From: Choristocarpus tenellus KU-1152
Lineage: Eukaryota; Protista; Phaeophyceae
Assembly: GCA_964200185.2 (NCBI GenBank)
Contig: CAXNAD020000036.1
Location: forward strand, 1-38,045
Direction of reading: 5' to 3'
Length of the DNA: 38,045 nt
How positions within the stretch are numbered: position 1 is the first letter of the stretch; every line of letters starts with the position of its first letter. The notes under the pieces were generated by a model. That model was not told where the DNA came from. It ran no database searches and saw only the letters and a program-made list of their open reading frames with translations. A program made the translations under genes and the position numbers. Positions 313 to 37,935 of the stretch are shown piece after piece.

Positions 313-557
313 TTCAATCCAAGGAGGCACTAGAGCAAGTCTGGCAGAGCCTCTTCGGAATGAAATGTGAAGTGCTGGGATCCAAGTGTGACAACGTCTT
401 CAATATTTCCCATCTTAGAAAGGAAAGTGCTTTAAAAGGCGGGCAAGCTCCACCCAAATGCCCTGGTGGATGCTACAAAATACCATGCTGGAGAGGATTT
501 TTGGAAGACTTTGAGGGTGTGATCATAGATAGGTGTAGGCTGATTCATTTTGCTTGA
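1..557 (+). pseudogene. Tc1/mariner transposase C-terminal remnant
   Basis: ORFs 103..333 and 360..557 are pieces of one transposase broken by frameshifts. The catalytic segment is present twice. Confidence 0.8.
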
Positions 558-1308
558 ATATGTGAAAAAAAAATTGTTTCTTCATTGGGGCTGCAAAAGT
601 TTTATCGCATTTAATTCCAAACGGAGTAAGTAGGACACTGTGGAAAGACTTGGTAATTCTCGTGAAGGCTATTGTTGTCAAAATATTTGAATACCAGTAT
701 GGCACAAGCAACCGCAGTATTTCGTACTTCAGAGTTTGACAGCAGCTGCTCAGGTTATGTAGTGGTGCATCCTTGCTAAGAGGGGGGAAATGTGGAAGTA
801 CCTTCATTGATCACTGCAAGTTATCAATCAATCATTGCAGTATTCTGCATGGAGCAGGAGGTTGGTACAAACAGTGGTGGCTGGCATGGTGTAGTAGGTT
901 ACATCTCTAATTTTGTGTTCATATCTGTTGTTTGGAGTGCTTGCGTATATTGTTGCTAAGCCAGGGATACAATCTACCATGAGGAATGTAATACTCCATG
1001 CAAGAAAGGCTCTACAAACATATAAGGAGAAGTGTCCAACTAGTACAATCTTATTGGACCCAAGTGCGCACAAAATGCTCATGCTTCCGCTGATTAAAAA
1101 GTAACCACTGTCCTTCCTGTATGAAAGATAAAAGACAGATCATCATTGATTCATTGATGAGGAATGAGCGTTGGGTCCCAGCAAGTGCCGAGAATGCTCC
1201 TTCCTAAGCTTTATGTCAATCCCTATCATAATCTTGATTCTGAGGCCTTCAATTGCAACTATTATGCCACACCTCATCAATCCTTAACCCACATGTTGGC
1301 GGATGCAG

Positions 1309-1446
1309 GCTCCTCTCCCTCCATCAGCGGGTGGTGCGGACTATGCCTTGTTTCTTCAAGGACATCAGTACATGGAGGTTCTTGCTCCAGTGGGCCTAGA
1401 GCGGTTGAACGAGCTCATTATTGCAGCTTGGTTCAACCCCTCAAAT
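1309..1446 (+). CDS. Exon 1 in window: start of LamG/ConA-like domain
   Basis: cag|GCT acceptor; YALFLQGHQYMEV...LIIAAWFNP; donor AAT|gtgaga. An alternative in-frame donor after 1476 is possible, and an in-frame ATG lies at 1303. Confidence 0.65.
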
Positions 1447-16400: not shown

Positions 16401-19400
16401 GGAACAAGGATTAATATAAAGGGAGATGGGTTTGTACCATCTTCTACCCTTATTTGCCATTTCCACACTATATCAGCTGACAAAAGTGTTAACCCTAGTC
16501 TGGCAAGTGCAGGGGTGGCTGTACCGGCTGATTTTGTCTCTGCGGAGTTGGTTCAGTGTGTGACTCCTTCAATATCTCAAATTCATCCACATAAGGGGGA
16601 TATCATGAAATTCATGCAGACATTGGTGGAAGTATCAAGCCATGCTTCATTCCTGACACCATCCACAGGCAAGGGTATGTCCTTTTGGTACCGACCTCTG
16701 CCAGAGGTGAGAATTTACCTTGGAAATTGATATAAATTTGCGCAGGAATAGTAGGTTAGCCTCTTTTTGAAAGCTGAAGAGGCTCTGCAGGTGATAGATG
16801 CGAATGATCCTATAGACTTTTTGTTTGTATCCTTTCACATAGCTACCTACCCTAACCCCAAACCTATTGTCATATGTGTGGTAGATTTAGTATCTTACCA
16901 CCACCTTCCTGTCAATTTCTTCTAAATTGCTCACCCGAACAGCTTGATTGCGGGGTGATACATTTCATGTATCTTTCTACACCTGTTACTGAACCGATTG
17001 TGATACCTAAATTTTTGCTACTTTGAAGTATGGAGTTTGGCATAGTATAAGGAGTATTTTCTTGTGAAATTTTGAGGCTGGTACTGACCAAATTCTACTT
17101 GGAAATGCTCTAGTCAAGAATGAGTTCTATCAGGCACACTAACAACATGGTACAATAGGTTAATGTGATAAGTGGTGCTGCAGAAGGAGAAAGGGACAAT
17201 CTTTTGTAGATGCCTTGTCAAATCTGCCAAAATAGAATGCCCAGTTCATTCCCACAATCATCCTTTTCTAAATATTAGTGATACATCTGTGAATAGAGGT
17301 ACATGATAGTGACCTCCCATGTGACCCACTAGGATATATCTACAAATGTAATAGTTTTTGTTGTTGCTTGCATGTTCATCTTGATGATGAATGTGAAGTA
17401 CATTAAGTCCATATATTTGTCTTTGGCCTGTTTGTACTTTGTGTTCTGTGCAGAGTTGGTTGCAGTAGGACATCCTAAGTATACTGGGGGTAGTGATGGA
17501 TTAGATTTTTTTCACGAGAAATGATTTAATCTGGAGTACATGCTGACATTCACAGGAGACATGAAGCCCTAGTGCCCCACCACCATTTTAGACCCCACAA
17601 ACCTAGGCGAAAGGGAGTCTTGTTAGGATTTTCTCTCTAGAGTGACTATGATACTTGTCGGCCTACCTGGTTGTCCAGGGGCACGAAGTTGCTGCTCCAG
17701 AGCTTGTTAGAGTAGAAGAGTATACATGTACTGCTCTATAGCAATCTTTTGTACCAGTGTTACAAAATAGATAGCATATCTGATCTCTCTCTCTCTCTCT
17801 CTGTATATGCATGCTTTCCTCCTCTGCATGCACACGAGACATTCCTCTCAGGTTCTCAAGATTCAACCACAATCTGGAAGTTTGATGGGTGGTACAAACA
17901 TCAAAGTGACTGGCCGAAATTTTGTCTCAAGCCAATCATTAGCTTGTCGCATTGGTCCAGTGCTAGCCCCAGCATTGTACTTGTCCTCAACATCCATTAC
18001 ATGCTCAAGTCCATGGTCTGATGCCCCTGGCACTGTCGACTTGGACATCACAGACAATGGCTTTGACTTTGTACAAGCGGGAAATTTCACATACCTTCCA
18101 GAGTCGACAATTCTCGATTTCTCTCCTCAATCTGGTCCATCTTCTGGGGGAACAACTGTTACACTGGAAGGAACTGGATTCTCAATAATGGGTATCCCAG
18201 CCTGCTCTGTTGGTGATGTTGTTGTTGCTGCCAAAGTGATAACATCCAAGAAGGCCATCTGTGTAACGCCATCAGCAAGAAACTTGGATGCAAATTTAAC
18301 CAGAGCTTCTATCATGTTTTCCAATAATGGTATCGATTTTGACAATAAAACTGGTGAAGAATTTGTGTACTATCCCAAACCTGAAGTTCTGTTGCTGAGT
18401 CCATCCTCTGGAGTTGTTGGAGGGGGTTCAAATATCATTTCAATGAAAGGTGTGCACCTCCTCAACTTTGGTGACAATGACTCAACAAGCAATGAAAAAT
18501 TGCTTTGTCGTCTGGGACCAGAGGGTCTAGCAATGAATGGGCGATCAATCTCCTCTACAGAGGCTGAGTGTACTGTAATTTGTGAAGACTATCCTGATCG
18601 CATCAACATTGAATTGTCTTTGAACGGAGGTGGGGATTGGACTGCATCTGGCATGAGTTTCCTCTGCAATATGTTGCCGAATGTCACGTCACTTTATCCA
18701 AAGTTTGGCCCCACTACTGGTGGAACCAGTGTTTCAATATCAGGTTCTGAGTTTGTGCATGGGTCTGGGATCCTTTGCTTGTTTGGTGACCGAAACAATA
18801 CTATGGTGCCTGGCTTGTGGATCTCAAGTTCAACGATTATCTGTGACACACCTGATGTAGGAAGGGATGGACCAGGAAACATCACCATCTCGGTTGCTAA
18901 TGATGGCCTCCATTTCTCGCTACAGACTGCTGTTACTTTCTTTCATTATGTTGCACCAATTTCTATCTCCAGAACCAACCCAGAGTTTGCTGTTCTATCA
19001 GCGGAGTCAGTTATAATTGTCATTGGTGCTAATTTCTTGGAAAGGGAAGAACTCTCCTGTGGCTTTCAGTCAACTGACATGAAACAGACACAATTGATTC
19101 CTGGGACTGCGGAGTTCATAAACAACACTGCTCTTCTTTGTCATGTGCCAAGTACTAAACTGAGTCCAGGGCAAGCACTTGTAACAGTCTCCAACAATGG
19201 TGTTGATTTTGAGGGCTCCTTTGAGGTGGGACTCGCTGAACCCCCTGAAGTAGTGCAACTCATTCCGCCCAAAGGGATGGCAAGGAGTGGTGCAATGCCT
19301 GTGGAGGTGAGTGAAAAAGATAAGCATGGATTCTTTTGGAATGATGTATTCACTGCTGTTGTCCTACCCACCATACCTCCTCCATAGCTTGCAGCATCCA

Positions 19401-22400
19401 TGCACTTATCATCTCTGATCTAAGAACCATGGTACTAGAGCGTAGTGTCCATCAAGATGATAGCTGTATCTCAGAGGTGTGCCACTCTTAATGGCTGACT
19501 TTGTCCAAAGCAAACGAGAGGTACCCAGGTTTCGGCTGTTTTACATTCTAAGTCTCTTTTGCAATCGTTTGCAATTCACCCATATTTCTATGGATGAAGT
19601 TCTAAGTTTGACTCGAGAGCATATGTTTCTCTATTGTTTGAAACTTTTCCTACACAACCTACAAAATATCCTATGCGGAATTGTAAAAAATGCAGCTCTG
19701 CGTACCTCTCGTATACTTTAACTCTTTGTACGACACTAATAGTTGACAGCGTGATGAAAAGCTCAGTTTTGACACTTAAGCAGAGTCCACTTAAGAAAAT
19801 ATATAGTTCAATCTTGTACATTAGATATGACTTGGGTTACCATTCGAGTAAGGTCCTGAGACTCAGCAGTTTTCCACCTCCATTTATTAACTTCTGCTCT
19901 GTGGACTCAAAACTAATCTAGTTTTATGAGTTCGTCAGACCCCGGTCCGTTGTACTTATTTTGATCTTGACTCTAGATTTAACCTACTCAAGTATACAAA
20001 TTTTCTGTGTAGTTAAAGCATTTGGCTTGGTGAATAATACCTTGTTGCCAACTGCTGTACTTGAAATGCCATGGACCCAGAGAGCGAATATAGAGTTCAG
20101 TATATAATATATGACTATCTGGAATATACTGTTGTAGCAATTTGACACGTTGCCCAGACCTCAGTTTCCCTGTGTGACCAAGTCGGAAATTCCACCTGTT
20201 ATATACTAACATATAAGTTGCGTCTTGCCCACTTTGTTTCGATATTTTCATTGCCATATAATCAGGTGATTGGCTCTGGATATATCAATCGTCCGGGTCA
20301 ACTCAAGTGCAGATTTGGAGCAGACATTGTAGATGCATCTTATGCCTCGAGCAATGTCATTCACTGCTCCACTCCTGCTCATGCTGTATCTGGCATCTAT
20401 GATGTCTCTGTGTCAATAGATGGCGGATTTAACTTTGGTGGTGCTTCCCCTGAAAACACAGGATCCTTCTTCTTTATGGAACCAGCGTTCATTGGAGGAA
20501 TATACCCTCGTTCTGGTCCAGAGAGTGGTGGAACAATTCTGAGAGTTGTGGGTACAGGGTTCAGCAAATTATATTCCTTTGTATGCGAGTTTGGCGGTCC
20601 CAACCAATTCAGTGCTCCTGCTGCTCTTGTCTCACCATCAGAACTTACGTGTATTGTCCCATCAGCACCTCCGAACTCTGCAAAAGAGGTTGATGTATTC
20701 ATCTCAGTGCATTTTGAGAGAGGATCCTTGGTTCTCAGCGAGCTACCTGGCCTCTTTTCTCCTCTCCGCTTCACATACTCTCCTGACCTGGAGCTTCGGA
20801 GTCTGACCCCGAGCTCTGGACCAATTTCAGGGGGCACCCAGGTTGATGTGACTGGGTCAGGATTTCTCCAAACTGGTCCTCAAGTGAATGACTCAATGTC
20901 ATCATATACAACAGGGGGGTCTGTTTGGTGCCGTTTTGGTGAAGCTGTGACTAGAGGCCTGCACCTTTCTAACAACTTGATTCGATGCTGGTCTCCCCAA
21001 AGACATGATACCAATGCAGCACAGGTTGAAGTGTCAATTAGCACCAACAATGGGGCAGACTTTGAGGGGGCATCTCCGAATGCGCTGGTAAGTCATGAAA
21101 TATGGTTGTAAGTTTCCACCTTCTAGAAAATGAGCACTAGTCCTAGCTTTAGGTGTGATAAGGGATATGAAAAAAAAATGGATACATTTGAACAAAAGAA
21201 GAATGTGAAGTATCAAGCTTAATATATGGAAAGCATGTGTAAGGATGTCAAATGATCTTCAATCCTAACACTTTCACTTCTCTCTTTCTGATGCACCCCA
21301 GATGTTTTCCTACGTGCACATCCCAGCATTCATTTCTCTGTCACCGAAATTTATGCCAACATCTGGTGGCACACTGGTAACTCTCTTTGGAGCTGGCTTC
21401 CCTCAAAATGATGGTACCCTCTGCCAATTTTCTACCTCTGAATCCACATCCGTATCTTATGCATACCATATCTCTAGTGAGAGACTGACCTGTGTTGCTC
21501 CATCCAACCCGTCTGAGGGTGCAGTGTATGCTGAGATCCACCTTGCATTTGGTGACACAATGCTACAGACAGGGCTTTCCGTGCAGTATGTAAAATCCAT
21601 GGAGATATTTTCCTTCAGCCCTGTTCAAGTCCATGAACACTTTTCTCATGATATTTTAATTGAGGGAAACAACTTTCCTGACCTGCCTGACCTATCCTGT
21701 AGAATTGGAGGCAGCGGACGATCCCCTGCTCTTTGGTTGCGACCAACAGCAATATCTTGCCAAACTCCAAACTCCTTGACCCCAGGAGATGTCACAGTGG
21801 AGATTACATTCAATGGTGCTGACTATATGACCGCTCCAGGTATGCTCTTGGTGGAAGAGAGGTTATTTATCACCAGTATGACCCCGGCAGTTGGCCCTGC
21901 ATCTGGCGGGACCATAGTTAGCATAAGAGGAACCGGCTTTGGTAGTGTTACTGCTTCAGGAGTCACCGTAGCCTGCAAGTTTGGGGAAGTGTTTGTCTTG
22001 GCCGAAATTGTTGATAGTGGGCTCCTACTTTGCACAACACCTCCTCAACTGGGCATGTTCGGTTCAGGTGGCTCTCTCCTTGTTAGTGTTGTTGGGCAGT
22101 ATACCTCAATTGTGCAAGCCCAGCATATCTTTCCAGGCTCTACACACAGCTTCTACTTTGTGGCTGATGTGCGGTTAACCATGGTGGGTCCAATAAGGGG
22201 ACCAGCAAAGGGTGGGACAATGGTGATGTTGGGAGGCTTGAGTACTCCATTGAAAGGGTTAGAAGCTGCAGGCATAAACCCTGACTTGAAGTGCATTTTT
22301 GGGCAGGTAGAAGCTCTTCATATCAGCATTGCACAAACTGAAGAGTCAGAGGGTACCAAGAAAATTAGATATTCTGTCAGGTGTGTATCTCCTCCCCTCC

Positions 22401-25400
22401 TAGATAAGGCTTCTGCAAACGTTAGCATTGGCATATCACTCAACGGTGGTATAGACTTCTCAACGTCCAGAGAACCCTTTATATACTATCCAGATCCTAT
22501 TTCCTTGGCTGTTGAACCCCCAATGGTCTCCACTATAGGAGGGTCAATGGTCACTCTATCAGGAAAAGGGTTTCCATCAACAGCAAACATCACGTGTATA
22601 TTCGGACAAGAGTTTGGCCTCAGCCTTGCTGAGTGGATATCAAATGAGGTCATCTGTTGTAGGGTGCCTCCACACTCACCAGGAATGGTTGCAGTGTCTT
22701 TAAAGATAGACGGCGTAGAATTCACTAATGCAAGCGTGGTGTTGGAGTATGGCCACGAGCTTTTCATCACAGATATTAAGCCACAGCATGTTGCTGCAGG
22801 AAGTGCCACTCAGCTGACCTTGATGGGAACAAATTTTTTTAATTCGACTCTCTTTTCAATACGTTGGCGGACTGACGGGTCAAAGTTATGGACAACATTT
22901 CCATTGGAGTATATTAACTCAACCACCGCTACATTAAACACTCCCCATCTCACCCTTAATGAAGGAGACAGCTGGGTTGATGTATTCATGGAGGTGTCCA
23001 ACAATGGATTGGATTTCATGGCCTTGCCTTTCCCAATTAAGGTGGCAGGTCCACCAAGGGTGACGTGGGGTTCTCCAAGGTATGGAAGTGCGGTAGGAGG
23101 CACAAAGATCACCTTGGTTGGAAAGTCATTCATACCTGCTGCGACCATTTGCAGGTATGTGCAACGAGTCCCACCTGGGACCAACGGCACGATTCCAAGC
23201 ATAGATCTGGATGCAGACGTGCTGAACTTGACTCAAGCAACTTGTGTTACCCCACCACTGGCACCTGGTGAATACTACATCAAGATGTTGTCTGGTCTAG
23301 ATCATAAGAACTCTACAGACACTTCATCCCACTTTTCCACAACAGGTTTCACCAGCATTCCACCTCCATATGTTTCAAGCTTTGACCCAAAGGTGTTGCC
23401 AGAGTCAGGAGGTGTTGCAGTCATCCTTGCAGGGGGAAATATGACACAGACAGGTCAAGAGACATGTCGATTTGGACCTGATAACCTTGTTGCTGCTCAT
23501 TGGGTGGACTCCAGAGCTATTCAGTGCATGGCCCCAGCTATGAGTGTCGGATCATATGAGCTTGGACTCACTTTCAACGGAGAAGATTGGATCATACTCC
23601 CACAGGCAATTAAGTATGAGCCAGACCGTGTTATCTTGAACTTGAGTCCAAGTTTTGGACCCTTTAGCGGAGGAACACCGGTTCGTATTCAAGGTACTGG
23701 ATTTGCAACAAAATTGAACAGCAGCAATGACGATGTTGAAGGAGGGCTCTATTGTCATTTTGGCCACCTTGAGGTAAGCTTTCCCTTTTGAGGTAGAGTT
23801 GATACAGCAAAATTATATTGCCAGTAGATACTCTGATTTAGAATCTGATGTTCAAAGAGGGACGTATTTCGACGGATCTGCCTTCCATTTGTGAGATTCT
23901 TGTACAGGCACGTATGTAGGTATGGCTCTTGAGATATGACATTGTTGCCCTTCGATTTGATAGATTGATCAAGGTATCCAGTTGGACTTCAAGACTTTTG
24001 ATTTGTTTAGCAGCCCCGCAAAAATTCAAAATCCCCTGGTGTGAAAGCTGAAGTGACAATTCACAAAGAGGGCACCAGGTTTCTGCAGAACAGGTCCAAT
24101 TCCAAGTCAATCAGTGCCCACCATCATCCACAAGCCATAGCTTCACTTTTTATGTTGAGCATAAAAATCGAAGAATGGAGTACTTTGTAGCGACCTCATG
24201 GTGCAAGAGAAGTGACTGACAGGCATGGTGGGAAAATAGAAAATGTTTTGAATCATTGCACAGGTGTGATGTCTTGACTTATGCAATGTGCAGAGCTATT
24301 TCAAGACAAGAACATATCCTTTCTGACTATGTAAAGAACACTACCGATGTTATCTTCTTATTTGAAGAAAAAATGACATTGAGCCTTATTGCACAGTTGA
24401 GGCATTGAGGCACATATATAACATCTTAACAATAACAGAGACTTGAATATATTTGGTATTGGAGACTTTCACATTGAGGATCTGTCAAGCCTAGGACATC
24501 AACAGCGCCAGGCAAATATGTCAATGTTATATTGGTGAACAAAAATCAATGTACTCTGCAATTTGAAATAATATTTTAGTAGCAAATACTCTCAAGCAAA
24601 AATACAAAATATCTCTTACCTTGAGACATGGCGTCGACTTTGATGACACCTTCAATAGTTGTTACCTTGCGGTGTTCGATCCCTTCTACTGACATCTGTG
24701 GCTGGCACCGCCATCCTTGTCACCCATCAAAGGTGATGGCCCGCCTTCTCACTGTCACAGAGCTTGAGTGCCTTACACCTTCAGTTCCAGAGGAACGATT
24801 GGTTGATGTTTCTGTTGCACTGCGCTATACCAACACTAAGCGGAAGACTGAGTTCCTTCTTGCTACTGGGGGTAGAAGTTTGGTATTCACATACTCTTCG
24901 GTGTCATCTGTGTCAGGGATCCACCCTGAGGCCGGGCCAGCACATGGTGGCATGTTGATTCATGTATATGGAGGCGGGTTTGCCCATTCAGAGTGGTTAT
25001 CCGTGCGCTTCTCAACCACACAAGCCAACACAACACGCCAACCCAACTTTGTCACAGCGAGTGAGTTGATAGTGAAATCTCCTCCTTGCCCTGATGTTCA
25101 ATATGGTGGCTTTGCCTCCATCGAAGTTTCGAACAATGGGGTTGACTTCTCATCGAATGGAATCATGTATTACTATGATGCCAGCAGGCCCTATGCTGAT
25201 GCAGTTAAGCCGAAATTAATCCGAGAAGGGGGGGGAACAGTTCTTTACGTGAGTGGGACAGCGTTTTCACAGCTGTTTTCCGGATCTTTAGCTTGTGTAT
25301 TTGGGGAGACAACATCTGTACCAGCAAAGTGGTTATCCAATGGACTCATCACATGCCTTGCCCCACCCCACAGGCTTGGAGTTGTTGTTGTTGGCATTAT

Positions 25401-28400
25401 GCATAATGGGGATGTCATATCATCGAGTGACCTCCATGTCGAATATATAGGAGCCTTGAGTATTGTGTCTTCATATCCCCTTGTTGGTCCTGCTGTTGGA
25501 GGCACTAATGTTACAGTGTATGGTGAGGGCTTTCGATCAGAGGAAACATACCTTTGTATGTTTGGAGACATTGCAGTACCTGTTCTGGCCGGAGATATTA
25601 ATTCCTCCAGTATCTCATGTATGTCACCGCCCTCGCACTATTTCCGAATGGGAATGGTACAGCTTCAACTCAAGCACTTAGGAGAAGGTACAGGCGGTCA
25701 AGACGACCGTAGGGATGGGAGCTACATCAATGATACCCAACTTTCTATGACGGTCAGAGGTGCTGCCTTTCACATGGCGCTAACTACACCCCTTTCATTT
25801 CAGTATCACATCAATATGGCTGTATCAAAGTTGTATCCCAGCCATGGGCCCTCATCCGGTGGATCTGCAGTACGAGTAGTAGGAATAGGATTTTTGAATC
25901 TTCCAACAATGGCCTGCCAGTTTGGTGTTGCACAGCCAAGTGTTGCGCAGTACGTCAATTCGCACACGTTGGTGTGTAGAGCTCCATCCCGAGCTGCTGC
26001 ATTGGGTAGAGAGGGGAAGAGAGAGACTTCTGATAGATTTGCTGCTGTCACTGTCACAGCAAATGGACTGGACTTTTCGTCAAGTGAATCAGCTGCTTAT
26101 TTTTCGTATGATGAAGATGTCATACTTCGCTCCCTTACACCTGATCGTGGTGCTGAGGCAATAGAGACAAGGGTGTTGATCCAAGGTAGTGGGTTTCGAG
26201 ATTCCTCACATTTGGCCTGTCGATTTGGACTCTATGTTATTCCTGCAGTTTTCATCAACGTGAGCATCATAGAATGCACAGCTCCCCCTAAGGGTCGCCT
26301 CAGAACAATGTCAGTTGATGTTACACTGAACGGACAGGACTTTGCTTCGGATGAGAATGGGAGTCTTGTTTTTTCTTATTCTGACCAAATTTCAGTGCTC
26401 GCCTTGAATCCACGATTGGGCTCAGTCCGAGGAGGTACCAATGTTCAAGTGTTGGGGATGAATTTTGAAAATCATACTGAACTCTTCTGCCTCTTTGGAG
26501 TGATCCAAGTTCCCGCAAACTTCCTTAGCTCAGAAGTTATTACATGCAATTCTCCACCTTCACTGACTGGCCCAGAGACAGTTGCAGTTGAGGTCTCCTA
26601 TCGACAATCCATGGATCCACAAGCAGGTCGAGGAAAAAGATATTTCAGACACCGTTCTCTGGCTTGGAGCAGCAGTGGAGTCAAGTTTGACTTTGCCATT
26701 GAACCTGCTGTGTTGAGCATGAGGCCTACTTCTGGACCAACATATGGTGGCACAAATGTTGTTATATATGGGAACAACTTTGTTGACTTGCCTGATCTTG
26801 GGTGTCGCTTTGGTTCCCTCTACACTCAACCATCAGATGTAATTTTCTTGTCCTCTACAGAACTTGTCTGTATAGCTCCAATGTGGACACTCCACGAAGG
26901 CAGAGAGACAGTAGCAGTGGCTGTTTCTGTCAATGGACAAGATTTTGGCAAACAGACCGGACAGTTTTCATATTATCTTCACCCACAGGTATGCTTTCGC
27001 CTCTCACAGGTAATTCGAGTAATTCCTCGGGAATGATGTGTGGCAATAGAATAACATAGGTGAACAAGGAAGCGAAACAAAGTGGTGTCAAATAGAGCCA
27101 AAACCTATGATGGATTATATTGTTGGAGATCACCCCCCCAAAAACTATGTTCTAGATGAGCAGCATGATGTCAATACCCACACTGCAATATGAATTTCAC
27201 TTGGTTGACATGTTTCTATATTTTCAGGTCCTCTCAGTTTATCCTGAGCGTGGCCTGATTACAGGGGGGACCGTGGTAACAGTTCAAGTTGACAACCTCA
27301 CATCTGCACTTTCTACTTACGAGGAGGGAGAACTGATGTGTCGATTTGGATCAGGTCCATATGAGGAATGGGGGGTTGTCCCTGCTGAAGCTCTACCTGG
27401 TCAAAATGCTCTTAACTGTGTTGCACCAGCTCCACCAGATGGCTTTGGACTTCTTGAGGTCAGATGTGTGGTTAAGTTGGACCCAGTAGCAAGCTTCATC
27501 ATTAGCAGCTCACCATTTGACATCCTATCTTACTATTCTAACGTCTGTATATGTATATGTGCTACAGGTACAGCAATTATCTATCACTGCATCATCTCAA
27601 GGAGCTGAAGTTCAGGTAGTTGAGGTGACTGCCCTTCCTGAGGCAGATGAAGTTCAAGAGATTTCCATTCGGGGCTGGGGATGGCAAAAGCAGGTCCAGG
27701 CGCTGAAGGTACAGGCCGTACTTGCAGAAAATGAAACTGCTGTGCAGGTGAGGTATAAAATCTACAAAAATAGTTTGAACAATTCCCAGGAAAACACCAC
27801 AGCTGGCATTCTATTGCCTCTGCCAAGTGTACAATGTTGACTGATGATAAACTTCGGTGGCGTGTACTCTTGAGTGTATCAAGCCAGATAATTATTTTTT
27901 CTGAATATCTGAGACTCTAATCAACTGGGCATGGGATGGTGCACATGTCTTGATCCCAACATACAAGATGTTTGTAGCCTTCTAGATTTTCCTTCTTTGT
28001 AGCCAGGTCAACTTTTCATTCTTGGCAACAGCAGCACTTATTCTGTCCAGAAGTGAGTTTGAGGAAAACATGAGGGACTTGGAGTGCTGTGAATGTCATA
28101 GTGGGAGGAGTGAGAGATATCGATAGAGATATCGATAGCGATGAAGCGTAAAGCTCAATTTACCGTGCTAGAGGAAATATCATTTGTAGCTGAAAGAAGA
28201 ACATGCTCACATGCACATCGTTAGGATGCATGAAGTGTGGCAGCCACATGCAGCATGCTCCTGCAGGTTTGCTGGCCTCCTGTCAAACCGACTTTGATCT
28301 ACCACCCAAAATACTGAATCTCAATAGATATCCCCTTCTTGGACAACAGGTCGTGCACACCTCATTGGAACACTCTCGGGAGGTGCAGCGAATTACTGTA

Positions 28401-31400
28401 GATGCTTCTGCAAATATCAGTGAGGTACTACTCTCATAGCACATGTTGCTTTCACAAACTAATCAAACTTCACAATAGTTCAGAGTCTTTGTAGTACTTT
28501 GCAAATTGTGGAGTGTTAGGTAGCACATAGTGAACTACAGTGATTTTTGGGAAATCTTTTGACAAGGAAGAGGGATCCAGACGCCTCAACCAACCTGCTA
28601 TCTGAGTCAAAGTATCTTAGACGGTAGAGTCGTGTCCTTTTGGGGGTCAACATCCGATGTTGCGATTGTGATGTAATTTTGCTATCGTATTTGATAGGAA
28701 GTATCAATATCCTTGTTCTGGACACACCTTTTCATAACGTATACATTTTACCTACTTTGAAACATTTTGGAGTAGAAAATGCCATAAAAAAACCCATGGT
28801 AAGCCAAGCCCCAAACGGACAAACAGGGCAAAACTTGTACCCTAACCCTAAGATACTTTCACTCATCTACAGTTTGTTTATCCATGATCTCAATATTTCA
28901 GGTTCAGCAGCTGATTGTGGCTTCTGAAGATATTTCTACACTTTCTGGAACCTTCATGCTCCGGCATGGCTTTCATTTTTCTGAACCTGTTCCATTTAAT
29001 GCTACTGCAAAGGAGGTGAGTTGCAGTCCTTGCAATAGCAAAAAGTGAGTGCCAAGATAAGAAAGAAATAATGTACAGAGACACAGCCTTGTTTTATGAC
29101 ATTTTGAAACCTGGAACACACAATTTGCAGCAATTGAACTCTCTGTCTTCTCCATTTCCCATGTGCTGTCCTCCATTCCTGTGTGTGATATATCTCAGAT
29201 CGAGGGAGCATTGGGTGGCATTCCAAGTCTAGGGGGTGCGATAGTCCAACGAAGAGATATTTTTGATTCTGTTCTTGGAATAGAGGGAACAGTCTATAAC
29301 ATTACAATGGCCTACGTGATTGGTGATGTTGCTTCATTGGTGGTGGTAACAAGCTCTCTTAGGGGTCTTGGTCTAAACACTTCAGTGGTAGAGGTAAGGA
29401 TACTGTGACTGTGGTTGAAATGTTCATTGCAGTCACAATGAAGAATACCTTCCCAACATGTACCCTTAGGTGCTTGTCCAATCAACAGATTTTCAAATTT
29501 TGATTGGTTCTCCACTCAATAATAGATTATTCCTCTTGCAGGGACTCTATCGTCTCTCACTCAAGTATCACTGTGCCGGAAACAGATTATGGTGTCTTTG
29601 CCATACCCAGCTCTTCTTGCCTTTGCTATTTGAGCAGATCAGTAGTTGTGCCTACCTGGGACTCCTTAGCAGCCTAGCAACATGTTTGAACAAATCTACA
29701 TATGTCATATTGGTGTAGATCATACTGAATTCTGCAGCTTGATTTTATTATTAAACCTAAAACTTCTTTCAGAAACGAACCTGAAGTCAAGCAGGGTATC
29801 TGTATTTGTTTAGTCCCTTCACGGAAAAAATCTTTCTCTTTGCATGTCTTGCAGCTGGTGAAAGGGGTACCCTGTGAAGTTCAGGATGTAGCAGTACATG
29901 GAGCAAAAGGGGGAGAACTCTTTCTCAGCTTCCGTGGGGAAGTTACATGGCCAATACCATGGAATGCACGATCAGCTGATGTGGAGGCTGCACTAGAAGT
30001 GAGAGGATTAAACCAACATAGATTAATATATACCCTGATCAAGCATCGAGGAAGCTGGAGAGCATTGACCTTCCATTCTAGCATGATGTGGGACTATATC
30101 AAGCTTGTCAATTTAAGAATACTGTTGTTTTTCCCCTGAGGATACTCCTGCTCTAATATAGATTGGATTAATTAATGAATGATTGACTTCTGTCCAAGGA
30201 CTATATTTATTGTGAGCATTATGTTGACCTCCTGTCTACATTGTTGAGCAGCACTCAATACAAGCAAGTACTGGAAGCAAATACTGCTCTTCTTCTCTAC
30301 CCCAAAACCTCTCTTGTGGTCGGCACAGGCCCTTGACACAATGGGTGATGTCATGGTCAACCTGACATCGCCAAATTCATATGATGGTCGGACTTGGTCC
30401 GTTGCCTTCATAGGGATTGGTGGAGACATGCCCCTTCTCATGGCAGACTCCTCAGGTTTAACAACTGAGTTTGCTAAGAGATCATCGGAAAATCCTCCAG
30501 ACTCTGCTGTAGTAACGGTAACAGAAGTGCACAAGGGGGCAGCAGAACTTGCTACAGGGGATGTCAATCTCTATTTCGACAGTGATGGAGATGGCATGTA
30601 TGAGAGCCTAGTTGTAGAGGTTATGGCGGAGGCTGATGCTCTGCAAATAGCCCTAAGAAATCTCAGTGGCTTCCTTGAGGGAGCATTGGTTTCAGTGGAG
30701 AATGGAGGAGCAAGAACTAGGAGTGGAGGTGAGAACTGCAGTCTGTGTGTAATAATTGTGCATTAGCTCATATACATCGGAAATAACTATATATGACCAA
30801 AAAAGAAGTTGCAAAGCATACTAAATCAAACATGGCATTGCAGACTGGAAATCCTTGTCTTTAGTTTTTCATGGCATCACCATACACTCTTCCATTTGCA
30901 GGCACTGCTTGGCTTGTCACATTCACGGAAGGCAGGGATCATGAGTCGTTTTACGTGGGGACAGAGGGAATGGGCGGAACATCACCTTTTGCACTCATAG
31001 AGGAGGTAAGACTGCAACCAGCTCAACAAATAAATGGAAGTAGCTGGTCGTCATTCTAGAGTTGGACCTTTTCAGGTGATGAGCTATCAGCTTCACCATA
31101 CTGTTGCAACAGCAACAGCACAAATAATAAGAGAGCATCTCCATGCATGACAGGTGATCAAGGGAACACAGTTTGAGGTGCAGAATGTGACAACAGTGGG
31201 ATCCTCAATGAGTGCAAAACTTGATTCCTTCTTCTTGGGCTTTGATGGAGGTGCGGCACATGAGTTAGCTCTTAGGGGATTCATAATTCAGGTGGCTTTC
31301 TTCCTTAGACTCAATAGAAGAGGCTTGGCTTATGACTGCTAGTGTTTTTGCCTCCCTTGTATATATATGTGCATAATATGTTTGTAGAGAGTTTAATTTG

Positions 31401-34400
31401 GTCATTTTTGAGTGCATGTGATGGTACAGAAATCCTAGGTTCTAGAGTTCCTTTTGTAGCTTTTTCACAGTCAAAAATCAGAAACCGCTGCCAGAATTTC
31501 ATGCCTAGGTCATGACCTCTAAGTCCTGGTCTGGCAAACTGAGATATGCATAAAAAATAATATAGTATGTCCAAAACAACCACAACCCTAACACTAACTT
31601 CTGTCCAACTGTGAATGCCTCGGGGGCTTGGAATGATTGCTAGTTACAACGGATTACTTAGCGGCAAATGCCAGTGCATCAGACATCCGTGCTGCACTGG
31701 AAGCCATTGATTCTGTTGGTGAAGTGAATGTTACAAGAGAGGACCTTGGTGGTCTCCTTTTCACTTGGCTCGTGACATTTTTTAAGCCATCAAGGACTGG
31801 TGACGACATTCCTCTGCTGTATGCTGGGGGGCAGGATCTAACAGGGTCCGGCCTTTCAACCTTGAGTGGTGGAATCAATGTCACACGTGTACAGAAGGGA
31901 ACCCTGAGATCAATATGTGGAGAGGTAAAGTAATAACATAATGCAAATCTCAGTGTCTGGGGAGAATAATTTTTCCCACTGGTGACCTTATGATCACGAA
32001 TCTCAATTGAATGAATAAAGGATTAGTAGTAACACTATTTTTAACTGTTTCCCTACCTTTATGTCATAGGTTGAGGTCAAAAACAAATTGCGGAACTGAC
32101 TATCTGGTAGAATATCTGAGTATGCTTATGTGCCTCTTTTGGGTGGTATGGTTAAGGCTTCTTATAAGACTTGAAATGACTCCTGCTAGATACCAAGTAC
32201 AGTATTCTGGTTCCCCTACTTCTGCACAGTTAAAGATTTCTTTGGGTGGAGGAGAAAACACTTCAGTGACAGTGTATCACAATGCTTCTGAAACAGAGAT
32301 GGAGAAGGCAGTGGAATCTCTACAAGGAGCAGGAGATGTAAAAGTCTCTAGGTCCTCAAATGGAGCAAATGGTCTTGAATCATTCAGGTAGGAAAATATC
32401 AACTTATTGAATAGGCAAGGCGATTCACAGCAACCATATATTTGTATTTTGTATTTGGGTGTTTCTTCTCTGTTTGTATTTCGATCCCATGCGATGACAT
32501 TGGATACTTTCTATTTCCAATAAACTCATCTATTTGTACCTAACTGGATCATGTGCTACATTAGCTAAATTATTATTAATTTCAGAACCGCAACATGCGG
32601 ATTTTCCCTCTTTGGCTGTCTCAGATGGACAGTAACTTTCCTCACCCGAGCTGGAGAGGTCCCGCCCTTATCAGCAAATGACAGTTACTTGACAGCACTA
32701 ACTCTCACTGGGGTAGCTTCAGCTGGTACAACAATATTGCAAGACGGAGCAGGAGTGTGCTGTATTGGTGGCAGTATCACTCTCAGCTTCAATGGCACAG
32801 AACTTGAGGAAATTGACCTTGACAATGGGGAGCTAGATTCAGCCTACTTGCTTCAGCGACTTGATGTTATTACGGAAGGTACGACTATCTCATGTAACTG
32901 AAAATCTGTAGCAAGGGCATTAGAATCAATTGATCATTCTCCTGGTGTACATTATGTAGTTGAGGATTGGACATGGATACTCTGGAGAACAATAATTTGA
33001 AGTTCGTAGGTTCTATGAATGCATGGGAGCCCAAATGAATGTTTGATATGCACATGTCTGATATATCCCTCCACTCTCTTCACAGGAGATGCTTGGGGTC
33101 CAGTAACTGTCAGTTACCATGCATTGATCAACAATGGCTCAACTTGGCTAATCACTTTCGAAGAGTATTCCAATGGTGATGCCCCGCTGCTTGTGGTTAG
33201 CGAAGATAGGGTTTCAAATGGAAAGGCATGGGTTGAGCAGCTGACAAGTGCAGAGCGGCCTGAGGTTCATCGGGTGCTAGTTGCAGCGGATTCAACGCTG
33301 GGATCTAGCAGCATGATAAGGTTGTCCTTGGGCAGCAAGGTTACCCGAGCTGTCAGCATTGATGCTTCGGCCAGTATTGTTCAAAATGTGAGCCTGTGTA
33401 ATGTGCTGTCCATTCTTTCATCCTAAGTGTGCAAGACTTAATACTCGAATTAGTTCATGAGGGTGGTTCGTTTTATAGATGGACCGTGTCCCACAAGAAG
33501 TTCTCAGCTTGTATGAAACTTGAATATGAGTAACTGGTATTCTGATCAGTGCAAGTGCACAAGTACAATAAGTTCATGTTGCGAGCAACTGGATGATATG
33601 CAACGTGTGACTCTCTCTGCCCTCCTATCCAACAAGTGGAGTTGCTAGAAAAATTATAGTGTAATCACTGTGTGGTCAGACTATGACTGAAGTAGACTAC
33701 ACCAATTTGTAGGAAGATGATTTTGATATTCTCTAAGATTGTAGATACTTTCACTTACAGTTTCCCAAAGCGATATTGTAACTGAGTCAAAATAGAGGGT
33801 AGAGCCATGTCCATTTGGGGGCCAAAGTTCCATGTTGTGATTTTGATGTAATTTTGGCTATCGAGTTTGTTAGGAAGTGTTAGTATCCTTGTTCCGGACA
33901 CACCTTTTCACAACATATACATTATACCTACTCCAAAATGTTTTGGAGTAGGTATAATGTCATAAAAAGTCTGAGGGAAGCCAAGCCCCAAACGGACAAA
34001 CAGGGCAAAACTTGTACCCTCTCTTAATAAGAGACTTTCACTCAACTGCTGCTCAATATCTAATCACAATCAAGAAAGGATAAGAAATTGAAACTACTAA
34101 CATCACACATCAATCTTTGTTGATGGTATGAATGCATCCCCAGGCATGTACTAGTGCTCGCTACATCATATCCCTCAGTACAATAATTATGCACAATCTG
34201 ATATGAAGCTTGAGCGATGAACTGCGCACTCTGTACTCTCTATATTGCACATGCGAATATTGTGCATGAATGGGACATAATAGCTCATGTCAACAAAAGG
34301 CTTTTAATAGCACCAAAAAGTCACTGTACATGGAGCGTTGATAAGTTCCTGGAAAGTTACTCTAAAAAAAAGACCTTGAATTACAGCTGTGTTGCTTCTA

Positions 34401-37400
34401 TGCTTCCTTGCTGTGAGTCAGGTAATGCACCAAGATCTTGCCTCTCTTGGAGTGCGGCCTTCCATCAGATCAGTGTCTGCATCAGAACTTCGCATGTCTG
34501 GTGACTACCGTGCATGGGACGTCACATGGACAACGGTCCCTGGCGGTCTTGGCACTGCTGACTTTAGTTGTACAGGAGTTAACTTGACAGCTATGTATAC
34601 AAGTGATGCAAGATGCTTTGTCTCCCATAGGCAATCTGCTACTAGTTCACCCCTATCGGGGGTATTTTCATTATCAACCACTGCTGGTGATACCCCTGAT
34701 CTTGCACACAATGCATCTGCCAATGAAGTGTCTGCGGCGCTTGGAACTCTTTCCATCGTCACCAATGTCTCTCTCATCAATACCCTTCCTGATGGGAAAG
34801 GTGGAGGAACTTACCGCATCACATTCTCGGGAACAGATAAAGAAATCAATCTCCTAGGTGTGATATCAACCTATCTTAATGGAACTGGTGCTACTGCAAG
34901 TACTCATGGTGCCACTCCAGGGTGCAGATGGGGGGGGGATTTTGCTATCTCTTTTGGTGACCTCGAGACAGAAGCTCTCTCTTACAATGCGTCACCAGAC
35001 GAAGTTCTTCATGAAATCCAGAACCTAGGCATTACTGACGAGATTACTGTTGAAAGACAGAGTTTGGACACAGGGTATAGGTGGATGGTAACCTTCCTGG
35101 GAGATCCTGGAGGACCCGTTGATTTGATGAAGGTGAGAAGTCAGTAAGGCGCACGTGTATCTCAACGTCTTACAGATGTGTTACTGCAAGTTGTTAGATC
35201 TCACACAATGTGTGCAACAACATGTATATATATATATAGAGAGAGAGACTCATAACACAAATAAAAAATCACCTTGAATTGATAAAAAAAATAGTCCAAA
35301 ACATAGCTTGCTCACATTTGGATTAATATTTTTTTTCAGAATATTCTATATTGGCAAAACTGTTGATCACAAAAGCTTGTTGCTTGTGCTAATACAGCTT
35401 TTGGATTGAGGCAAACCATTGACTATATCCCAGGAATCCACCCAGGGCGCTCAAACTATCCCCAAAGGCATCCAATATTTTTTCCATGCCTAAAGCGAGT
35501 TTATATCTTGATATTGGTCAGATTTTGTTTTCATGATGGAGAAATGGATGTATCCTAACCTTGAAATTTCACACTTGGAAAATGTGAAACTTTGTGGTGA
35601 TATCTTTTGTTGCTTCTCCACATACACTACACAAGTTTTGGATTAAACATGCTACTCCCCTTTTGAGTTGTCCTGCAATGCGTGCATGTACCCATATTTA
35701 TACACATATCAAAATTTCTAGCACAGTTAGAGTATTTTTATTGTCATGAAGTCATCATAATAATGATATCGGTGTAGTTCTGTTGGCAAGATCAAAAGAG
35801 ATTCACATTGCTTCTAAGGATATTTGCATTCATTCTGTGCACAGGAATCAGATCATGCACGCCCACCAAGAATGCCATTTTTGCAAAAATTCTGAGGGCC
35901 TACATGCAGTACCTTTTTGTATTGTATTGTATTGATTACTTGAATACTAGGCACTCCACACAAATTTTCTGTTGACATTTTCTCTGTTTTTTATATATTT
36001 TCATATTTTGCAACAGAATTCAATTGAGTTAAGTTTGGACGCATATGTCTATACTTCTATATTTGGATATTCCTCCTCACCCAGTTAGTTGCATCATCGA
36101 CAAAGCAGTTGTTCCCGCTGACACACAATGGTCAGGTGGCTTGGGAGGATTTACAAGGCACAGGAAGTCACGCATATGTCTATCATCAGTCCAGCGGACA
36201 TGAGCCTCTGGGTGGAACGTTTTCCCTCTTATATGGTGGCAGTATCACTGTCCCAATTGCGTGGAATGCCACAGCAACTGAAGTAGAAGTTGCTCTTGAA
36301 AATCTCCCTGCTGTGGGTGACGTGCATGTCTCCATTGCTGCACCGGGCTCAAGTTGGGCAATTGAGTTTACAACACTTGGTGCACCGTCAAATCTTGGAA
36401 ACCTTCCACTCCTTGAAGTGGACAGGACTTTCCTTCAGGGGAGTTCAGTGACTGTACAGATTGAGGAATTATCTGCAGGCTGTTGTGCTGTTGAAGTCAC
36501 AGCAAATGGGGGCACAGATTTTTCCGACGATGGGGTATCTTTTGCGTACTTTGAACGTCCTGTTGCTACTGCTGTAATTCCTAGGGCTGGCCCTACTTCT
36601 GGAGGAACCCAGATTGTGGTAATAGGACTAGGGTTTCATCCCCATTCAAAGGCAGAGAATGCTGAACAAGGTGGACTCTCATGCATATTTGGAGGCTTAA
36701 TAGAGACTCAAGCCACACTTATCAACTCAACAGCAGCCAAGTGTGTCACCCCACCAACAGATCGGAGGGGCACCATTACAGTTGCAATGAAGTGGGATGG
36801 TTCAGTTGATTCTTCCTTCAGTATTGCCACCTTCTTATACTTCGATAGCACTTCGATTCAATACATGAAACCCAGTCGATTTTCCAACTATGGTGGCATT
36901 GAGTCCACAGTATATACCTATCAAGGATCGTTCATGGGTGCTGAGGTATCATGCATAGTTGAAGTCAGGATACCCTCCAATCTTACCAAGGTGGGATATG
37001 TGTCCAAGGAGTACACATATGTGGCAACACTACTAGAAACAAATACAACAGAGGCATATCTGTGCCCCATACCAGGGATTGGAGATTTCTTTGACTCTGC
37101 CTCCTCGTGGATTGATGGTGACTGGAGAGCTGCTGGATTCATTAACCTGTCTGGAAATGATGGCCAAGACAAGACAAACCACCTCATCTTCCAATACAAG
37201 CCGCCTGTTCATGTAGATTATGTTGAACCTTCAACTGGGGAATATAGTGGCGGAGTATTAGTCGAAGTTACAGGGTCTGGTTTCCTAGAAGGGGATGAAC
37301 ACAACAGCCTACTTTGCCACTTTGGACATGGGGGTGAGGTCCCTGGTCGTTTTCTGAGCCCAACTAAGATGGAATGTCAAGCACCACCACACGACAACGT

Positions 37401-37935
37401 GCAATCAGTACAAACAATTACAGTTGATGGAGCTTCTGCTTTCCATGAGATACAAAATATATTGCTCCGGACACCCATTTCCAAGTCGGGCAACATCAAC
37501 AACATCAGTTTCCCATTGCGAGGAACATGGAGTCTGGAGGTTGAAGGGTGGACAACATCAGGTCTTGCACCAAATGCAAGCACCCAAGATATGTCAAAAG
37601 CCCTATATCTACTTCCCAATGTGGGCAATGTGAATGTTACTAAGGAATATGATACTTTAGAGGAATCTTCACTCGGTGACCTTTGGAATATCACAGGTTG
37701 GACAGTCACCTTCATTGATCGTGGTGGTGATGTACCAGCAATGACTGGAGATACTTCAAATCTGTTTGGTGGCTCTCCTTCCGGCAACCCTGATGTAGTG
37801 ATTCGCACAACACAGGATGGGCATGAGGGTGATGATGTTTTGCAAGTTGTGTATATGTTGCAAACGAACAGGTCCAGCTTGATGCCAGAGACACAGGTTG
37901 TGACATTGGCAGTTGGAGCAAAGCCATTGCCTGAG
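1309..37935 (+). CDS. Giant multi-exon extracellular IPT/TIG-repeat protein (fibrocystin-L-like modules), partial, at least 7,581 aa in 27 exons
   Basis: 27 exons bounded by AG/GT with matching phases at all 26 internal introns (21 phase 0, 4 phase 1, 1 phase 2). Domain motifs continue across junctions. About 59 repeats of the IPT/TIG pattern P..GP..GGT.V.V.G.GF...C.FG...C..P...V.VS.NG.DF...F.Y. No stop is reached, and the last exon ends at a GTGAGT donor. Confidence 0.9.
1964..2143 (+). CDS. Exon 2: LamG-like domain
   Basis: tttcag|GGA ... AAG|gtgagc, phase 0-0. Confidence 0.75.
2939..3166 (+). CDS. Exon 3: LamG-like core
   Basis: ctgcag|GTC ... GAG|gtggga; encodes QWSHILVGWNETHAFVHAN and YYTGLIDNLE, matching the W.H...W and F.G.ID motifs. 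Confidence 0.85.
3702..3961 (+). mobile_element. MITE copy 1 (about 260 bp, intron 3)
   Basis: TIRs GAGCCAAAGTATCTTAGAGAGTA / TACCCTCTAAGATACTTTCACTC; colinear with the copies at 28604 and 33784; possible CTCT TSD if one base was lost. Confidence 0.85.
4081..4794 (+). CDS. Exon 4: end of LamG region plus cadherin-like/Big domain
   Basis: caaag|GTG ... AGG|gtgagg; GLVSLWRFHEGRG; LTYIPNPG...ISYTV...ATVLLSVQAVIDLP. Confidence 0.85.
5160..5624 (+). CDS. Exon 5: second cadherin-like domain and start of IPT 1
   Basis: aacag|GAT ... GAG|gtgagc; VNDVDA...TNRALHDL; ends PMAAPVTGGLNLE. Confidence 0.88.
5891..7994 (+). CDS. Exon 6: IPT/TIG domains 1-7
   Basis: aacag|GTT ... ACCG|gtgaga (phase 1). Confidence 0.92.
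8001..8060. repeat. Imperfect 30-bp tandem duplication at the start of intron 6
   Basis: GAAATTGCTTTTGGGTACTGAAATGGTTGA / GAAATTGTTGTTGGATCCTGAACTGGTTGG. Confidence 0.6.
9293..15234 (+). CDS. Exon 7 (5,942 nt): IPT/TIG domains about 8-28
   Basis: aatag|GT (phase 1) ... CAG|gtaaga; 2037-aa ORF made of IPT repeats. Confidence 0.95.
15786..16706 (+). CDS. Exon 8: IPT/TIG domains about 29-31
   Basis: atcag|GTT ... GAG|gtgaga. Confidence 0.92.
17784..17801. repeat. (TC)9 microsatellite
   Basis: Read directly; about 50 nt upstream of the exon 9 acceptor. Confidence 0.9.
17852..19306 (+). CDS. Exon 9: IPT/TIG domains about 32-37
   Basis: ctcag|GTT ... GAG|gtgagt. Confidence 0.92.
20266..21087 (+). 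CDS. Exon 10: IPT/TIG domains about 37-39
   Basis: atcag|GTG ... CTG|gtaagt. Confidence 0.92.
21302..23773 (+). CDS. Exon 11: IPT/TIG domains about 40-48
   Basis: cccag|ATG ... GAG|gtaagc. Confidence 0.92.
24733..26988 (+). CDS. Exon 12: IPT/TIG domains about 48-55
   Basis: caaag|GTG ... CAG|gtatgc; CHFGHLE|VMARLL joins one domain across the intron. Confidence 0.9.
27228..27458 (+). CDS. Exon 13: N-terminal part of split IPT domain 56
   Basis: tttcag|GTC ... GAG|gtcaga; PERGLITGGT...CRFG...CVAP. Confidence 0.88.
27568..27747 (+). CDS. Exon 14: tandem EVQ strand repeats
   Basis: tacag|GTA ... CAG|gtgagg. Confidence 0.85.
28113..28136. repeat. 12-bp tandem duplication AGAGATATCGAT x2
   Basis: Read directly, intron 14. 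Confidence 0.7.
28350..28424 (+). CDS. Exon 15: EVQ strand repeat
   Basis: aacag|GTC ... GAG|gtacta; VVHTSLEHSREVQRITVDASANISE. Confidence 0.8.
28604..28864 (+). mobile_element. MITE copy 2 (intron 15)
   Basis: GAGTCAAAGTATCTTAG ... CTAAGATACTTTCACTC, flanked on both sides by ATCT (4-bp TSD). Confidence 0.9.
28902..29015 (+). CDS. Exon 16: module A start (absent from the ORF track)
   Basis: ttcag|GTT ... GAG|gtgagt; VQQLIVASEDISTLSGTFMLRHGFHFSEPVPFNATAKE. Confidence 0.85.
29199..29393 (+). CDS. Exon 17: module A
   Basis: ctcag|ATC ... GAG|gtaagg. Confidence 0.85.
29855..29998 (+). CDS. Exon 18: module B start
   Basis: tgcag|CTG ... GAA|gtgaga; EVQDV...IPWNARSADVEAALE. Confidence 0.87.
30329..30728 (+). 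CDS. Exon 19: modules B and C
   Basis: cacag|GCC ... GGAG|gtgaga (phase 1). Confidence 0.87.
30902..31005 (+). CDS. Exon 20: module C end
   Basis: tgcag|GC (phase 1) ... GAG|gtaaga; TAWLVTF. Confidence 0.85.
31154..31250 (+). CDS. Exon 21: module D start
   Basis: gacag|GTG ... GGAG|gtgcgg (phase 1); EVQNV. Confidence 0.8.
31644..31924 (+). CDS. Exon 22: module D
   Basis: gctag|TT (phase 1) ... GAG|gtaaag; ANASASDIRAALE...WLVTF. Confidence 0.85.
32230..32387 (+). CDS. Exon 23: module E
   Basis: cacag|TTA ... TTCAG|gtagga (phase 2). Confidence 0.83.
32625..32878 (+). CDS. Exon 24: modules E and F
   Basis: ctcag|A TGG (phase 2, restores RWTVTF) ... GAAG|gtacga (phase 1). Confidence 0.85.
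33086..33387 (+). CDS. Exon 25: modules F and G
   Basis: cacag|GA (phase 1) ... AAT|gtgagc. Confidence 0.85.
33784..34043 (+). mobile_element. MITE copy 3 (intron 25)
   Basis: GAGTCAAA ... ACTTTCACTC, flanked on both sides by AACT (4-bp TSD); internal 20-bp perfect inverted repeat at 33919-33960. Confidence 0.9.
34422..35132 (+). CDS. Exon 26: modules G, H and I
   Basis: gtcag|GTA ... AAG|gtgaga. Confidence 0.87.
35225..35248. repeat. (TA)7(GA)5 compound microsatellite
   Basis: Read directly, intron 26. Confidence 0.9.
36136..37935 (+). CDS. Exon 27: module J, completion of IPT 56, IPT 57-59, start of second module block
   Basis: gtcag|GTG ... GAG|gtgagt; the gene continues past the window. 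Confidence 0.9.

What the first reader, a model, noticed from the sequence alone, without database searches (positions are those of the whole stretch)
27228..36549. A ~1,120-aa block is inserted inside one IPT domain, implying a side branch
Seen: IPT 56 begins normally (PERGLITGGT...CRFG...CVAPAPPDG) and then stops. Its missing last strands (AVEVTANGGTDFSDDGVSFAY) appear only at about 36487-36549, after 3,360 coding nt of a different repeat. Inference: the domain folds from two halves and the insert loops out from the turn after C..P, so the chain leaves and rejoins the stalk at one point. The result would be a branched rather than linear giant protein, and standard domain scans would miss it.
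Basis: partly seen in the sequence, partly recalled or inferred. Interest (0 to 1): 0.85.

Follow-up and report, generated by a model that had tools for sequence, protein, structure and literature searches.

The report
Giant surface filament with nested side-arms
A giant surface protein of a brown seaweed, shared with water moulds and other relatives, appears to grow three side-arms from a single chain: the chain leaves one bead-like domain, runs out as one long strand, folds back domain by domain around that strand and then finishes the domain it left, so one gene makes a branched filament.

Summary
Confirmed and extended. The IPT domain at 27228-27458 stops after strand E. Its last two strands occur only at 36487-36552, 1,122 codons later over 15 in-frame exons; all 15 are collinear in Discosporangium. 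The insert is ten copies of a phage-tail-type alpha/beta domain (Bxb1 CTE-like). Ten first strands and ten strand-less bodies are ordered like nested brackets. Two more IPT domains of the same gene are split at the same loop (5/5 and 13/13, the last count predicted before I looked). Oomycete, Phaeothamnion, Cantina and metagenome orthologues keep the splits with other copy numbers, still balanced by manual count. AlphaFold models of two orthologous segments rejoin the IPT halves (84-87 residues match solved IPT domains, 1.6-2.9 A); in one model the outermost strand pairs with the last body. Best reading: a membrane-anchored IPT filament with three there-and-back arms near its base. Not shown: a fold of this window's own spliced chain, RNA from this species, the middle pairings, and function. 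Earlier scan notes saw the second split and nesting in Fn3/filamin domains elsewhere in this genome; I found no paper describing it.

The parts
4075..5690 (+). Exons upstream of the IPT run; equivalent region of orthologues holds LamG-like and cadherin-like domains
   Evidence: Translations; LamG domains at the N-terminus of P0173 and P0147; no Pfam hit in these two window exons, so the label is by analogy
5500..27000 (+). About 55 intact tandem IPT/TIG domains (main stalk), in large exons
27228..27458 (+). Split IPT no. 1, strands A-E (one exon, phase 0)
27450..28930 (+). Outgoing run of 7 short first strands, 13-16 residues apart (exons 27568-27747, 28350-28424 and the starts/ends of their neighbours)
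   Evidence: all 7 found by a matrix trained on non-IPT proteins, scores 6.8-19.9
28941..29866 (+). Repeat body 1 (tip of arm 1; pairs with strand 7); exons 28902-29015, 29199-29393
   Evidence: pairing inferred
29870..30540 (+). Strand 8 plus body 2: self-contained twig; exons 29855-29998, 30329-30728
30550..31165 (+). Body 3, no own strand; exons 30329-30728, 30902-31005
31169..31900 (+). Strand 9 plus body 4: twig; exons 31154-31250, 31644-31924
31905..33250 (+). Bodies 5 and 6, no own strands; exons 32230-32387, 32625-32878, 33086-33387
33257..34640 (+). Strand 10 plus body 7: twig; exons 33086-33387, 34422-35132
34650..36480 (+). Bodies 8, 9, 10, no own strands; exons 34422-35132, 36136-37935; body 10 predicted to take strand 1
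   Evidence: outermost pairing seen in the orthologue model
36478..36552 (+). Strands F and G that complete split IPT no. 1
36556..37200 (+). Two intact IPT domains
37204..37395 (+). Split IPT no. 2, strands A-E
   Evidence: orthologous segment modelled
37396..37935 (+). Start of arm 2: two strands, one body, three more strands (the last split by an intron); continues on contig C386, which closes arm 2 and holds arm 3
28603..28865 (.). High-copy MITE-like element in an intron; not part of the protein

Best explanation
The window holds most of one giant, spliced gene for an extracellular filament protein of a brown alga. After about 55 IPT domains, three IPT domains (three apart, near the C-terminal end) each carry an arm inserted in the loop between strands E and F. 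An arm is built from a ~100-residue alpha/beta domain homologous to the CTE-like domains of mycobacteriophage Bxb1 tail and capsid proteins. Each copy is itself inserted into the previous copy right after its first beta-strand. The chain therefore runs outward as one extended strand, giving one strand to each domain at about 13.6 residues per domain, folds the tip domain, and comes back laying down each body around the waiting strand, last in first out, then supplies strands F and G of the IPT. Copies that keep their own strand form one-domain twigs. Arm 1 is 7 domains deep with 3 twigs, arm 2 is 4 deep with 1, arm 3 is 9 deep with 4 (at most about 30, 18 and 40 nm). Shown by sequence: the split, the counts and order, conservation. 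Shown only in models of orthologues: IPT rejoining, outermost and innermost pairing. Inferred: middle pairings (from strand spacing and short body-to-body linkers), intrachain rather than swapped folding, membrane anchoring (from an Aphanomyces orthologue), and role. Likeliest role: structural arms near the base of a ~200 nm glycosylated stalk with a lectin-like tip, spacing or bracing neighbouring filaments or presenting glycan-binding surfaces; I put the role at about 0.5, the architecture higher.
For: Complementary halves, no local replacement. Collinear exons in Discosporangium. Strand/body balance 10/10, 5/5, 13/13 here; the four missing strands of arm 3 were predicted in note 2 and then found in two small in-phase exons. 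Balanced by manual count in 13 complete inserts of relatives, in one stop-free ORF (L029, 7/7) and in a Cantina marsupialis transcript assembly (13/13). Lead length tracks the number of strands needed: slope 13.6 aa, r 0.98, n 10. Model 1: IPT chains span residues 1-535 (84-87 aligned, 2.6-2.9 A, Z about 10); Bxb1 capsid and tail-tube CTE domains span 68-70 to 507-510 (86-88 aligned, 2.1-2.4 A), i.e. first strand with last body. Model 2: IPT chains span 1-694 (84-85 aligned, 1.6-1.9 A, Z about 12). Repeat profile hits PDB 9d93 gp23 at 1e-50. Four hydrophobic stretches near the C-terminus of P0194.
Against: No RNA run exists for this species here. Both models are of orthologues, from alignments I built, with low pTM (0.53, 0.38); the third strand and strand G of model 1 have low confidence. 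The tool gives ranges, not contacts, so middle pairings were not read. Some strands are degenerate and counted by eye; the automatic matrix undercounts them (207 spare strands for 470 strand-less bodies across all hosts, r 0.64). The ten points of the regression are relatives, not independent. No functional data.
Confidence: 0.82

Rival explanations
1. Same parts, but pairing is between chains: the strand run of one molecule is taken up by the bodies of a neighbour, so the arms are cross-links that bundle or net filaments.
For: Strand complementation between subunits is common in pili (general knowledge). Single-chain AlphaFold cannot show swapping.
Against: Every complete insert is balanced within itself and in last-in-first-out order, and both single-chain models close the IPT. 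The chain has to return to the same IPT to supply F and G.
Confidence: 0.08
2. The stalk stays linear: the first one or two insert strands complete the IPT locally as F and G, the repeats follow in line, and the distant F/G motif is a remnant or caps another domain.
For: HMM alignments of the N-half run on into the first insert strand (profile positions up to 70-77).
Against: No local F/G score; the F/G motif is kept after the last body in every complete insert; counts only balance if all strands go to bodies; models place the first strand in the last body and F/G in the IPT.
Confidence: 0.05
3. Gene-model or assembly artefact: two genes or a mis-joined contig, or an optional exon cassette that is spliced out to give a normal IPT.
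For: No RNA evidence in this species; fragmented assembly; introns hold high-copy repeats.
Against: Public-run contigs (which may be the window's own sample) cover 27150-28631 and 28839-33100 without a break; Discosporangium is collinear over all 15 exons; single ORFs and a transcript assembly of relatives hold the whole arrangement. Strands F/G share one exon with body 10, so the insert cannot be skipped cleanly.
Confidence: 0.03

Closest known systems
Mycobacteriophage Bxb1 tail-tip cage protein gp23 (PDB 9d93) and the CTE domains of its capsid and tail tube (9d9w, 9d9x, 9d94)
   Same: Same repeat domain by sequence (E 1e-50) and fold (86-92 residues, 2.1-2.5 A). gp23 has three CTE-like domains in its distal tail protein (PMC13252515); its sequence shows three N-parts followed by later C-parts, so the domain nests in itself there too.
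   Different: In gp23 and its relative P0025 the copies nest at a later loop (after the fourth strand), three deep, in a tail protein. Here they nest after the first strand, up to nine deep, with twigs, inside IPT domains of a eukaryotic surface protein.
TLP-IPT glycofibril (bioRxiv 10.1101/2025.09.30.679562)
   Same: A single chain of many tandem IPT domains forming an extracellular filament (rise 32.7 A per domain).
   Different: Described as a linear fibril of over 200 domains, source unknown and linked to cryptophytes; no split domains or arms in the passages I read.
Nested domains of flagellar FliD and contractile tail sheath proteins
   Same: Domain-in-domain insertion that projects outward; the repeat resembles sheath and FliD domains at Z 6-7 and tail sheath/major tail PHROGs.
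   Different: Two to four fixed nested domains (general knowledge), not a variable-length recursive arm of one repeat with side twigs.
Plexin and MET IPT stalks
   Same: IPT fold and tandem arrangement.
   Different: Three to six domains, none known to me to be split by a 500-1,500-residue insert.

Membership tests
IPT/TIG domain (PF01833), split domain 1 | Strands A-E with the conserved Pro-Gly turn and Cys pair | tested here: met
   Pfam positions 4-60, 21.3 bits; 34.4 bits on the window profile
IPT/TIG domain (PF01833), split domain 1 | Strands F and G present | tested here: met
   17.2 bits at 36487, only hit
IPT/TIG domain (PF01833), split domain 1 | Both halves form one seven-strand sandwich | tested here: met
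   In models of two orthologous segments only; the window's own joined chain was not folded
Bxb1 CTE-like domain | Sequence homology | tested here: met
   9d93 E 1e-50, 9d9w 2e-8, tail tube 8e-6; window body 10 hits tail PHROGs at about 2e-6 to 6e-6
Bxb1 CTE-like domain | Same fold including the first strand | tested here: met
   Z 10-11.6, 2.1-2.5 A over 83-92 residues
Bxb1 gp23-type self-nesting | Insertion after the fourth strand | tested here: not met
   Insertion is after the first strand here
TLP-IPT-type glycofibril | Long tandem IPT core | tested here: met
   about 56 IPT hits before the first split
TLP-IPT-type glycofibril | Dense O-glycan shell, over 200 domains | not testable with these tools
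   No glycan data; domain count here is far below 200
Tubular mastigoneme component | Homology to, or co-location with, known mastigoneme proteins | tested here: inconclusive
   Repeat profile hits PDB 9ufe OCM6 at E 0.077 with plausible motif match; it was not among the top 50 structural matches

The most novel reading that the evidence does not exclude
Stramenopiles use a general, recursive 'bracket grammar' to build tree-shaped proteins from one chain: a phage-tail-derived domain that accepts copies of itself after its first strand is dropped into loops of IPT, Fn3 and cadherin-like domains, so that arm length and twig pattern are set by the number and order of short strands and bodies. These proteins would be the branched hairs or side filaments seen on stramenopile cells or flagella, and their shape could be read from, and designed into, sequence.
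Probability: 0.45. Interest if true: 0.9.

Novelty: new variant of a known kind. Interest (0 to 1): 0.78.

Why it matters
Giant repeat proteins are usually read as linear strings of domains. Here sequence order and structure part ways in a rule-like manner: a protein's branching pattern is written as nested brackets and has been kept, with changing arm lengths, from brown algae to oomycetes and Cantina. It gives a concrete structural prediction for unassigned environmental glycofibrils (arms three domains apart near one end), names a common eukaryotic repeat with no Pfam family and ties it to phage tail proteins, and offers a natural template for single-chain branched scaffolds.

Tried and rejected
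Local completion of the IPT by reading through the 27459 donor or by a hidden exon: no score. My first exon model had two wrong boundaries (stops in exon 10); corrected against Discosporangium to 31154-31250 and 32230-32387. RNA support: the two public runs found show genomic coverage and no splice joints. Foldseek could not bridge the insert and found only the N-half. Alignments A2 and A4 misplaced fragments and were not used for folding. The strict strand matrix undercounts degenerate strands, so counts in relatives are manual. The Bxb1 primary paper and any OCM6 paper are not in the library. Ten literature searches found no description of split IPT domains or these arms; that library lacks most subscription papers.

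Full report
Setting. The window is a whole contig (C36) of a 164 Mb, fragmented eukaryotic assembly. Its closest protein match is from the brown alga Discosporangium mesarthrocarpum at 57% identity, so the host is very likely an early-branching brown alga (inference). The + strand carries one large spliced gene of tandem IPT/TIG domains, about 56 profile hits before position 27228.

Observation. Exon 27228-27458 covers Pfam TIG positions 4-60 of 84 and 4-61 of 89 of a profile made from intact domains of this window. A profile of strands F-G alone scores 17.2 bits at 36487 and at most 4.1 anywhere else in the three forward frames of 27440-36556. Fifteen exons with AG/GT ends give one open frame and 1,122 codons between the halves. 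All fifteen match the Discosporangium locus in order at 48-80% identity. Public contigs support the assembly over most of 27150-33100 but show no spliced joints.

What the insert is. It consists of ten bodies of about 90 residues and ten short first strands. A profile of the repeat matches the Bxb1 tail-tip protein gp23 (E 1e-50) and the C-terminal domains of the Bxb1 capsid and tail tube; PMC13252515 calls the gp23 domains CTE-like. It has no Pfam family and occurs in about 19,800 representative proteins, including planctomycete and phage proteins where strand and body are mostly adjacent.

The order of parts. In arm 1 seven strands come first, 13-16 residues apart; then body 1; strand plus body; body; strand plus body; two bodies; strand plus body; three bodies; then strands F-G. 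Read as opening and closing brackets this is balanced and never closes early. A second IPT at 37204 is split at the same loop; the gene continues on contig C386, where that arm closes with 5 strands and 5 bodies and a third IPT is split. For the third I counted 13 bodies and 4 inner strands, wrote down that the lead must hold 9 strands when only 5 were visible, and then found 4 more in two small in-phase exons, one of them degenerate but on the 13-15 residue period.

Relatives. The same three split domains occur in Aphanomyces, Pythium, Phaeothamnion and several metagenome proteins, and the third in a Cantina marsupialis transcript assembly. The insert starts right after the strand-E Cys-x-x-Pro in essentially all 32 cases flagged (one of these is a false call of an intact neighbour). 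Copy numbers differ (arm 1: 4, 4, 7, 9, 10; arm 3: 9, 12, 13), yet manual counts balance in all complete inserts examined; a few bodies were missed by the profile and read from long gaps. Lead length rises by 13.6 residues per strand needed (r 0.98, n 10, related sequences), about the length of one domain in extended chain.

Structure. P0147 residues 5866-6400 (4 strands, 4 bodies; orthologue of arm 1) gave mean pLDDT 84.5, pTM 0.53. Solved IPT domains align over 84-87 residues from residue 1 to 533-535 at 2.6-2.9 A, although the N-half has only about 68 residues; Bxb1 and Patience CTE-type domains align from residue 68-70 to 507-510, that is the first strand with the last body; sheath domains pick out the innermost strand with the first body. 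P0060 residues 1332-2025 (Phaeothamnion, orthologue of arm 2 with its twig) gave pLDDT 78.7, pTM 0.38, and IPT domains align over 84-85 residues from 1 to 694 at 1.6-1.9 A. The middle pairings were not read directly; they follow if bodies are stacked by their 4-6-residue linkers and strands are 14 residues apart (inference). Low pTM means the angle and stiffness of the arms are unknown.

How it likely works. Orthologues begin with LamG domains and end with Cys-rich repeats and, in Aphanomyces P0194, four hydrophobic stretches. With 3.3 nm per IPT (bioRxiv 10.1101/2025.09.30.679562) the stalk is about 180 nm to the first arm. I read it as a membrane-anchored surface filament with a lectin-like tip and three arms near its base, of at most about 30, 18 and 40 nm. 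Because both ends of an arm sit at one loop, the arm carries no load along the stalk and can change length without altering it, which fits the varying copy numbers (inference). A spacing or bracing role is my best guess (about 0.5). A tie to flagellar hairs rests only on a weak hit to OCM6 (E 0.077) and is a lead (about 0.2).

Wider pattern. In this genome the same repeat appears to sit inside Fn3 domains (C337) and cadherin-like domains (C193), and giant relatives show deep bracket-like runs. Over 162 blocks, 35 detected strands are left unmatched against 171 expected if order is shuffled, but the detector finds only about half the strands needed, so the rule is well supported for the IPT arms and only moderately for other hosts.

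Comparison and novelty. Domain insertion, nested domains in FliD and tail sheaths, self-nesting of this very domain in Bxb1 gp23, and tandem-IPT fibrils are known. I found no description of recursive first-strand nesting that makes variable, twigged side-arms on a eukaryotic filament (ten searches; the library lacks most subscription journals). New variant of a known kind; interest 0.78.

Method notes. The exon chain was translated joined only inside one local script, to check the frame and locate strands with a local matrix (one search counted lengths). Earlier scan notes on the second split and on nesting in Fn3/filamin domains were read after I had reached these points myself.

Noticed in passing
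window 3702-3961, 28603-28865, 33782-34045: Three copies of a ~260-nt element with 18-23-nt terminal inverted repeats, in non-coding DNA; read depth about 10,000 times the background: a very high-copy MITE.
   Followed up: partly
window 1-330: A 162-nt tandem duplication whose translation looks like the C-terminal end of a Tc1/mariner-type transposase (from memory; no Pfam hit).
   Followed up: partly
L024 and L025 (G000:C337): Giant Fn3 protein with the same repeat inserted inside Fn3 domains, between their middle strands.
   Followed up: partly
L026 5107-8889 and L027 3002-6199, - strand (G000:C193): Giant protein of cadherin-like repeats with complete bracket-ordered inserts of the same domain within single exons; no Pfam hit. 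A good in-genome folding target.
   Followed up: partly
G000:C62: A second giant IPT gene with a 5,210-codon open frame.
   Followed up: no
P0025 and PDB 9d93: Mycobacteriophage minor tail proteins nest this domain three deep at a different loop, so the fold tolerates self-insertion at two sites.
   Followed up: partly
PDB 9ufe chain FA, residues 232-337: OCM6 shows a weak (E 0.077) but motif-consistent match to the repeat, hinting that the domain may be part of tubular flagellar hairs.
   Followed up: partly
P0040 residues about 500-3900: A 7,591-aa metagenome protein with about 15 strands in a row and a deeply sub-branched block of roughly 28 bodies.
   Followed up: no
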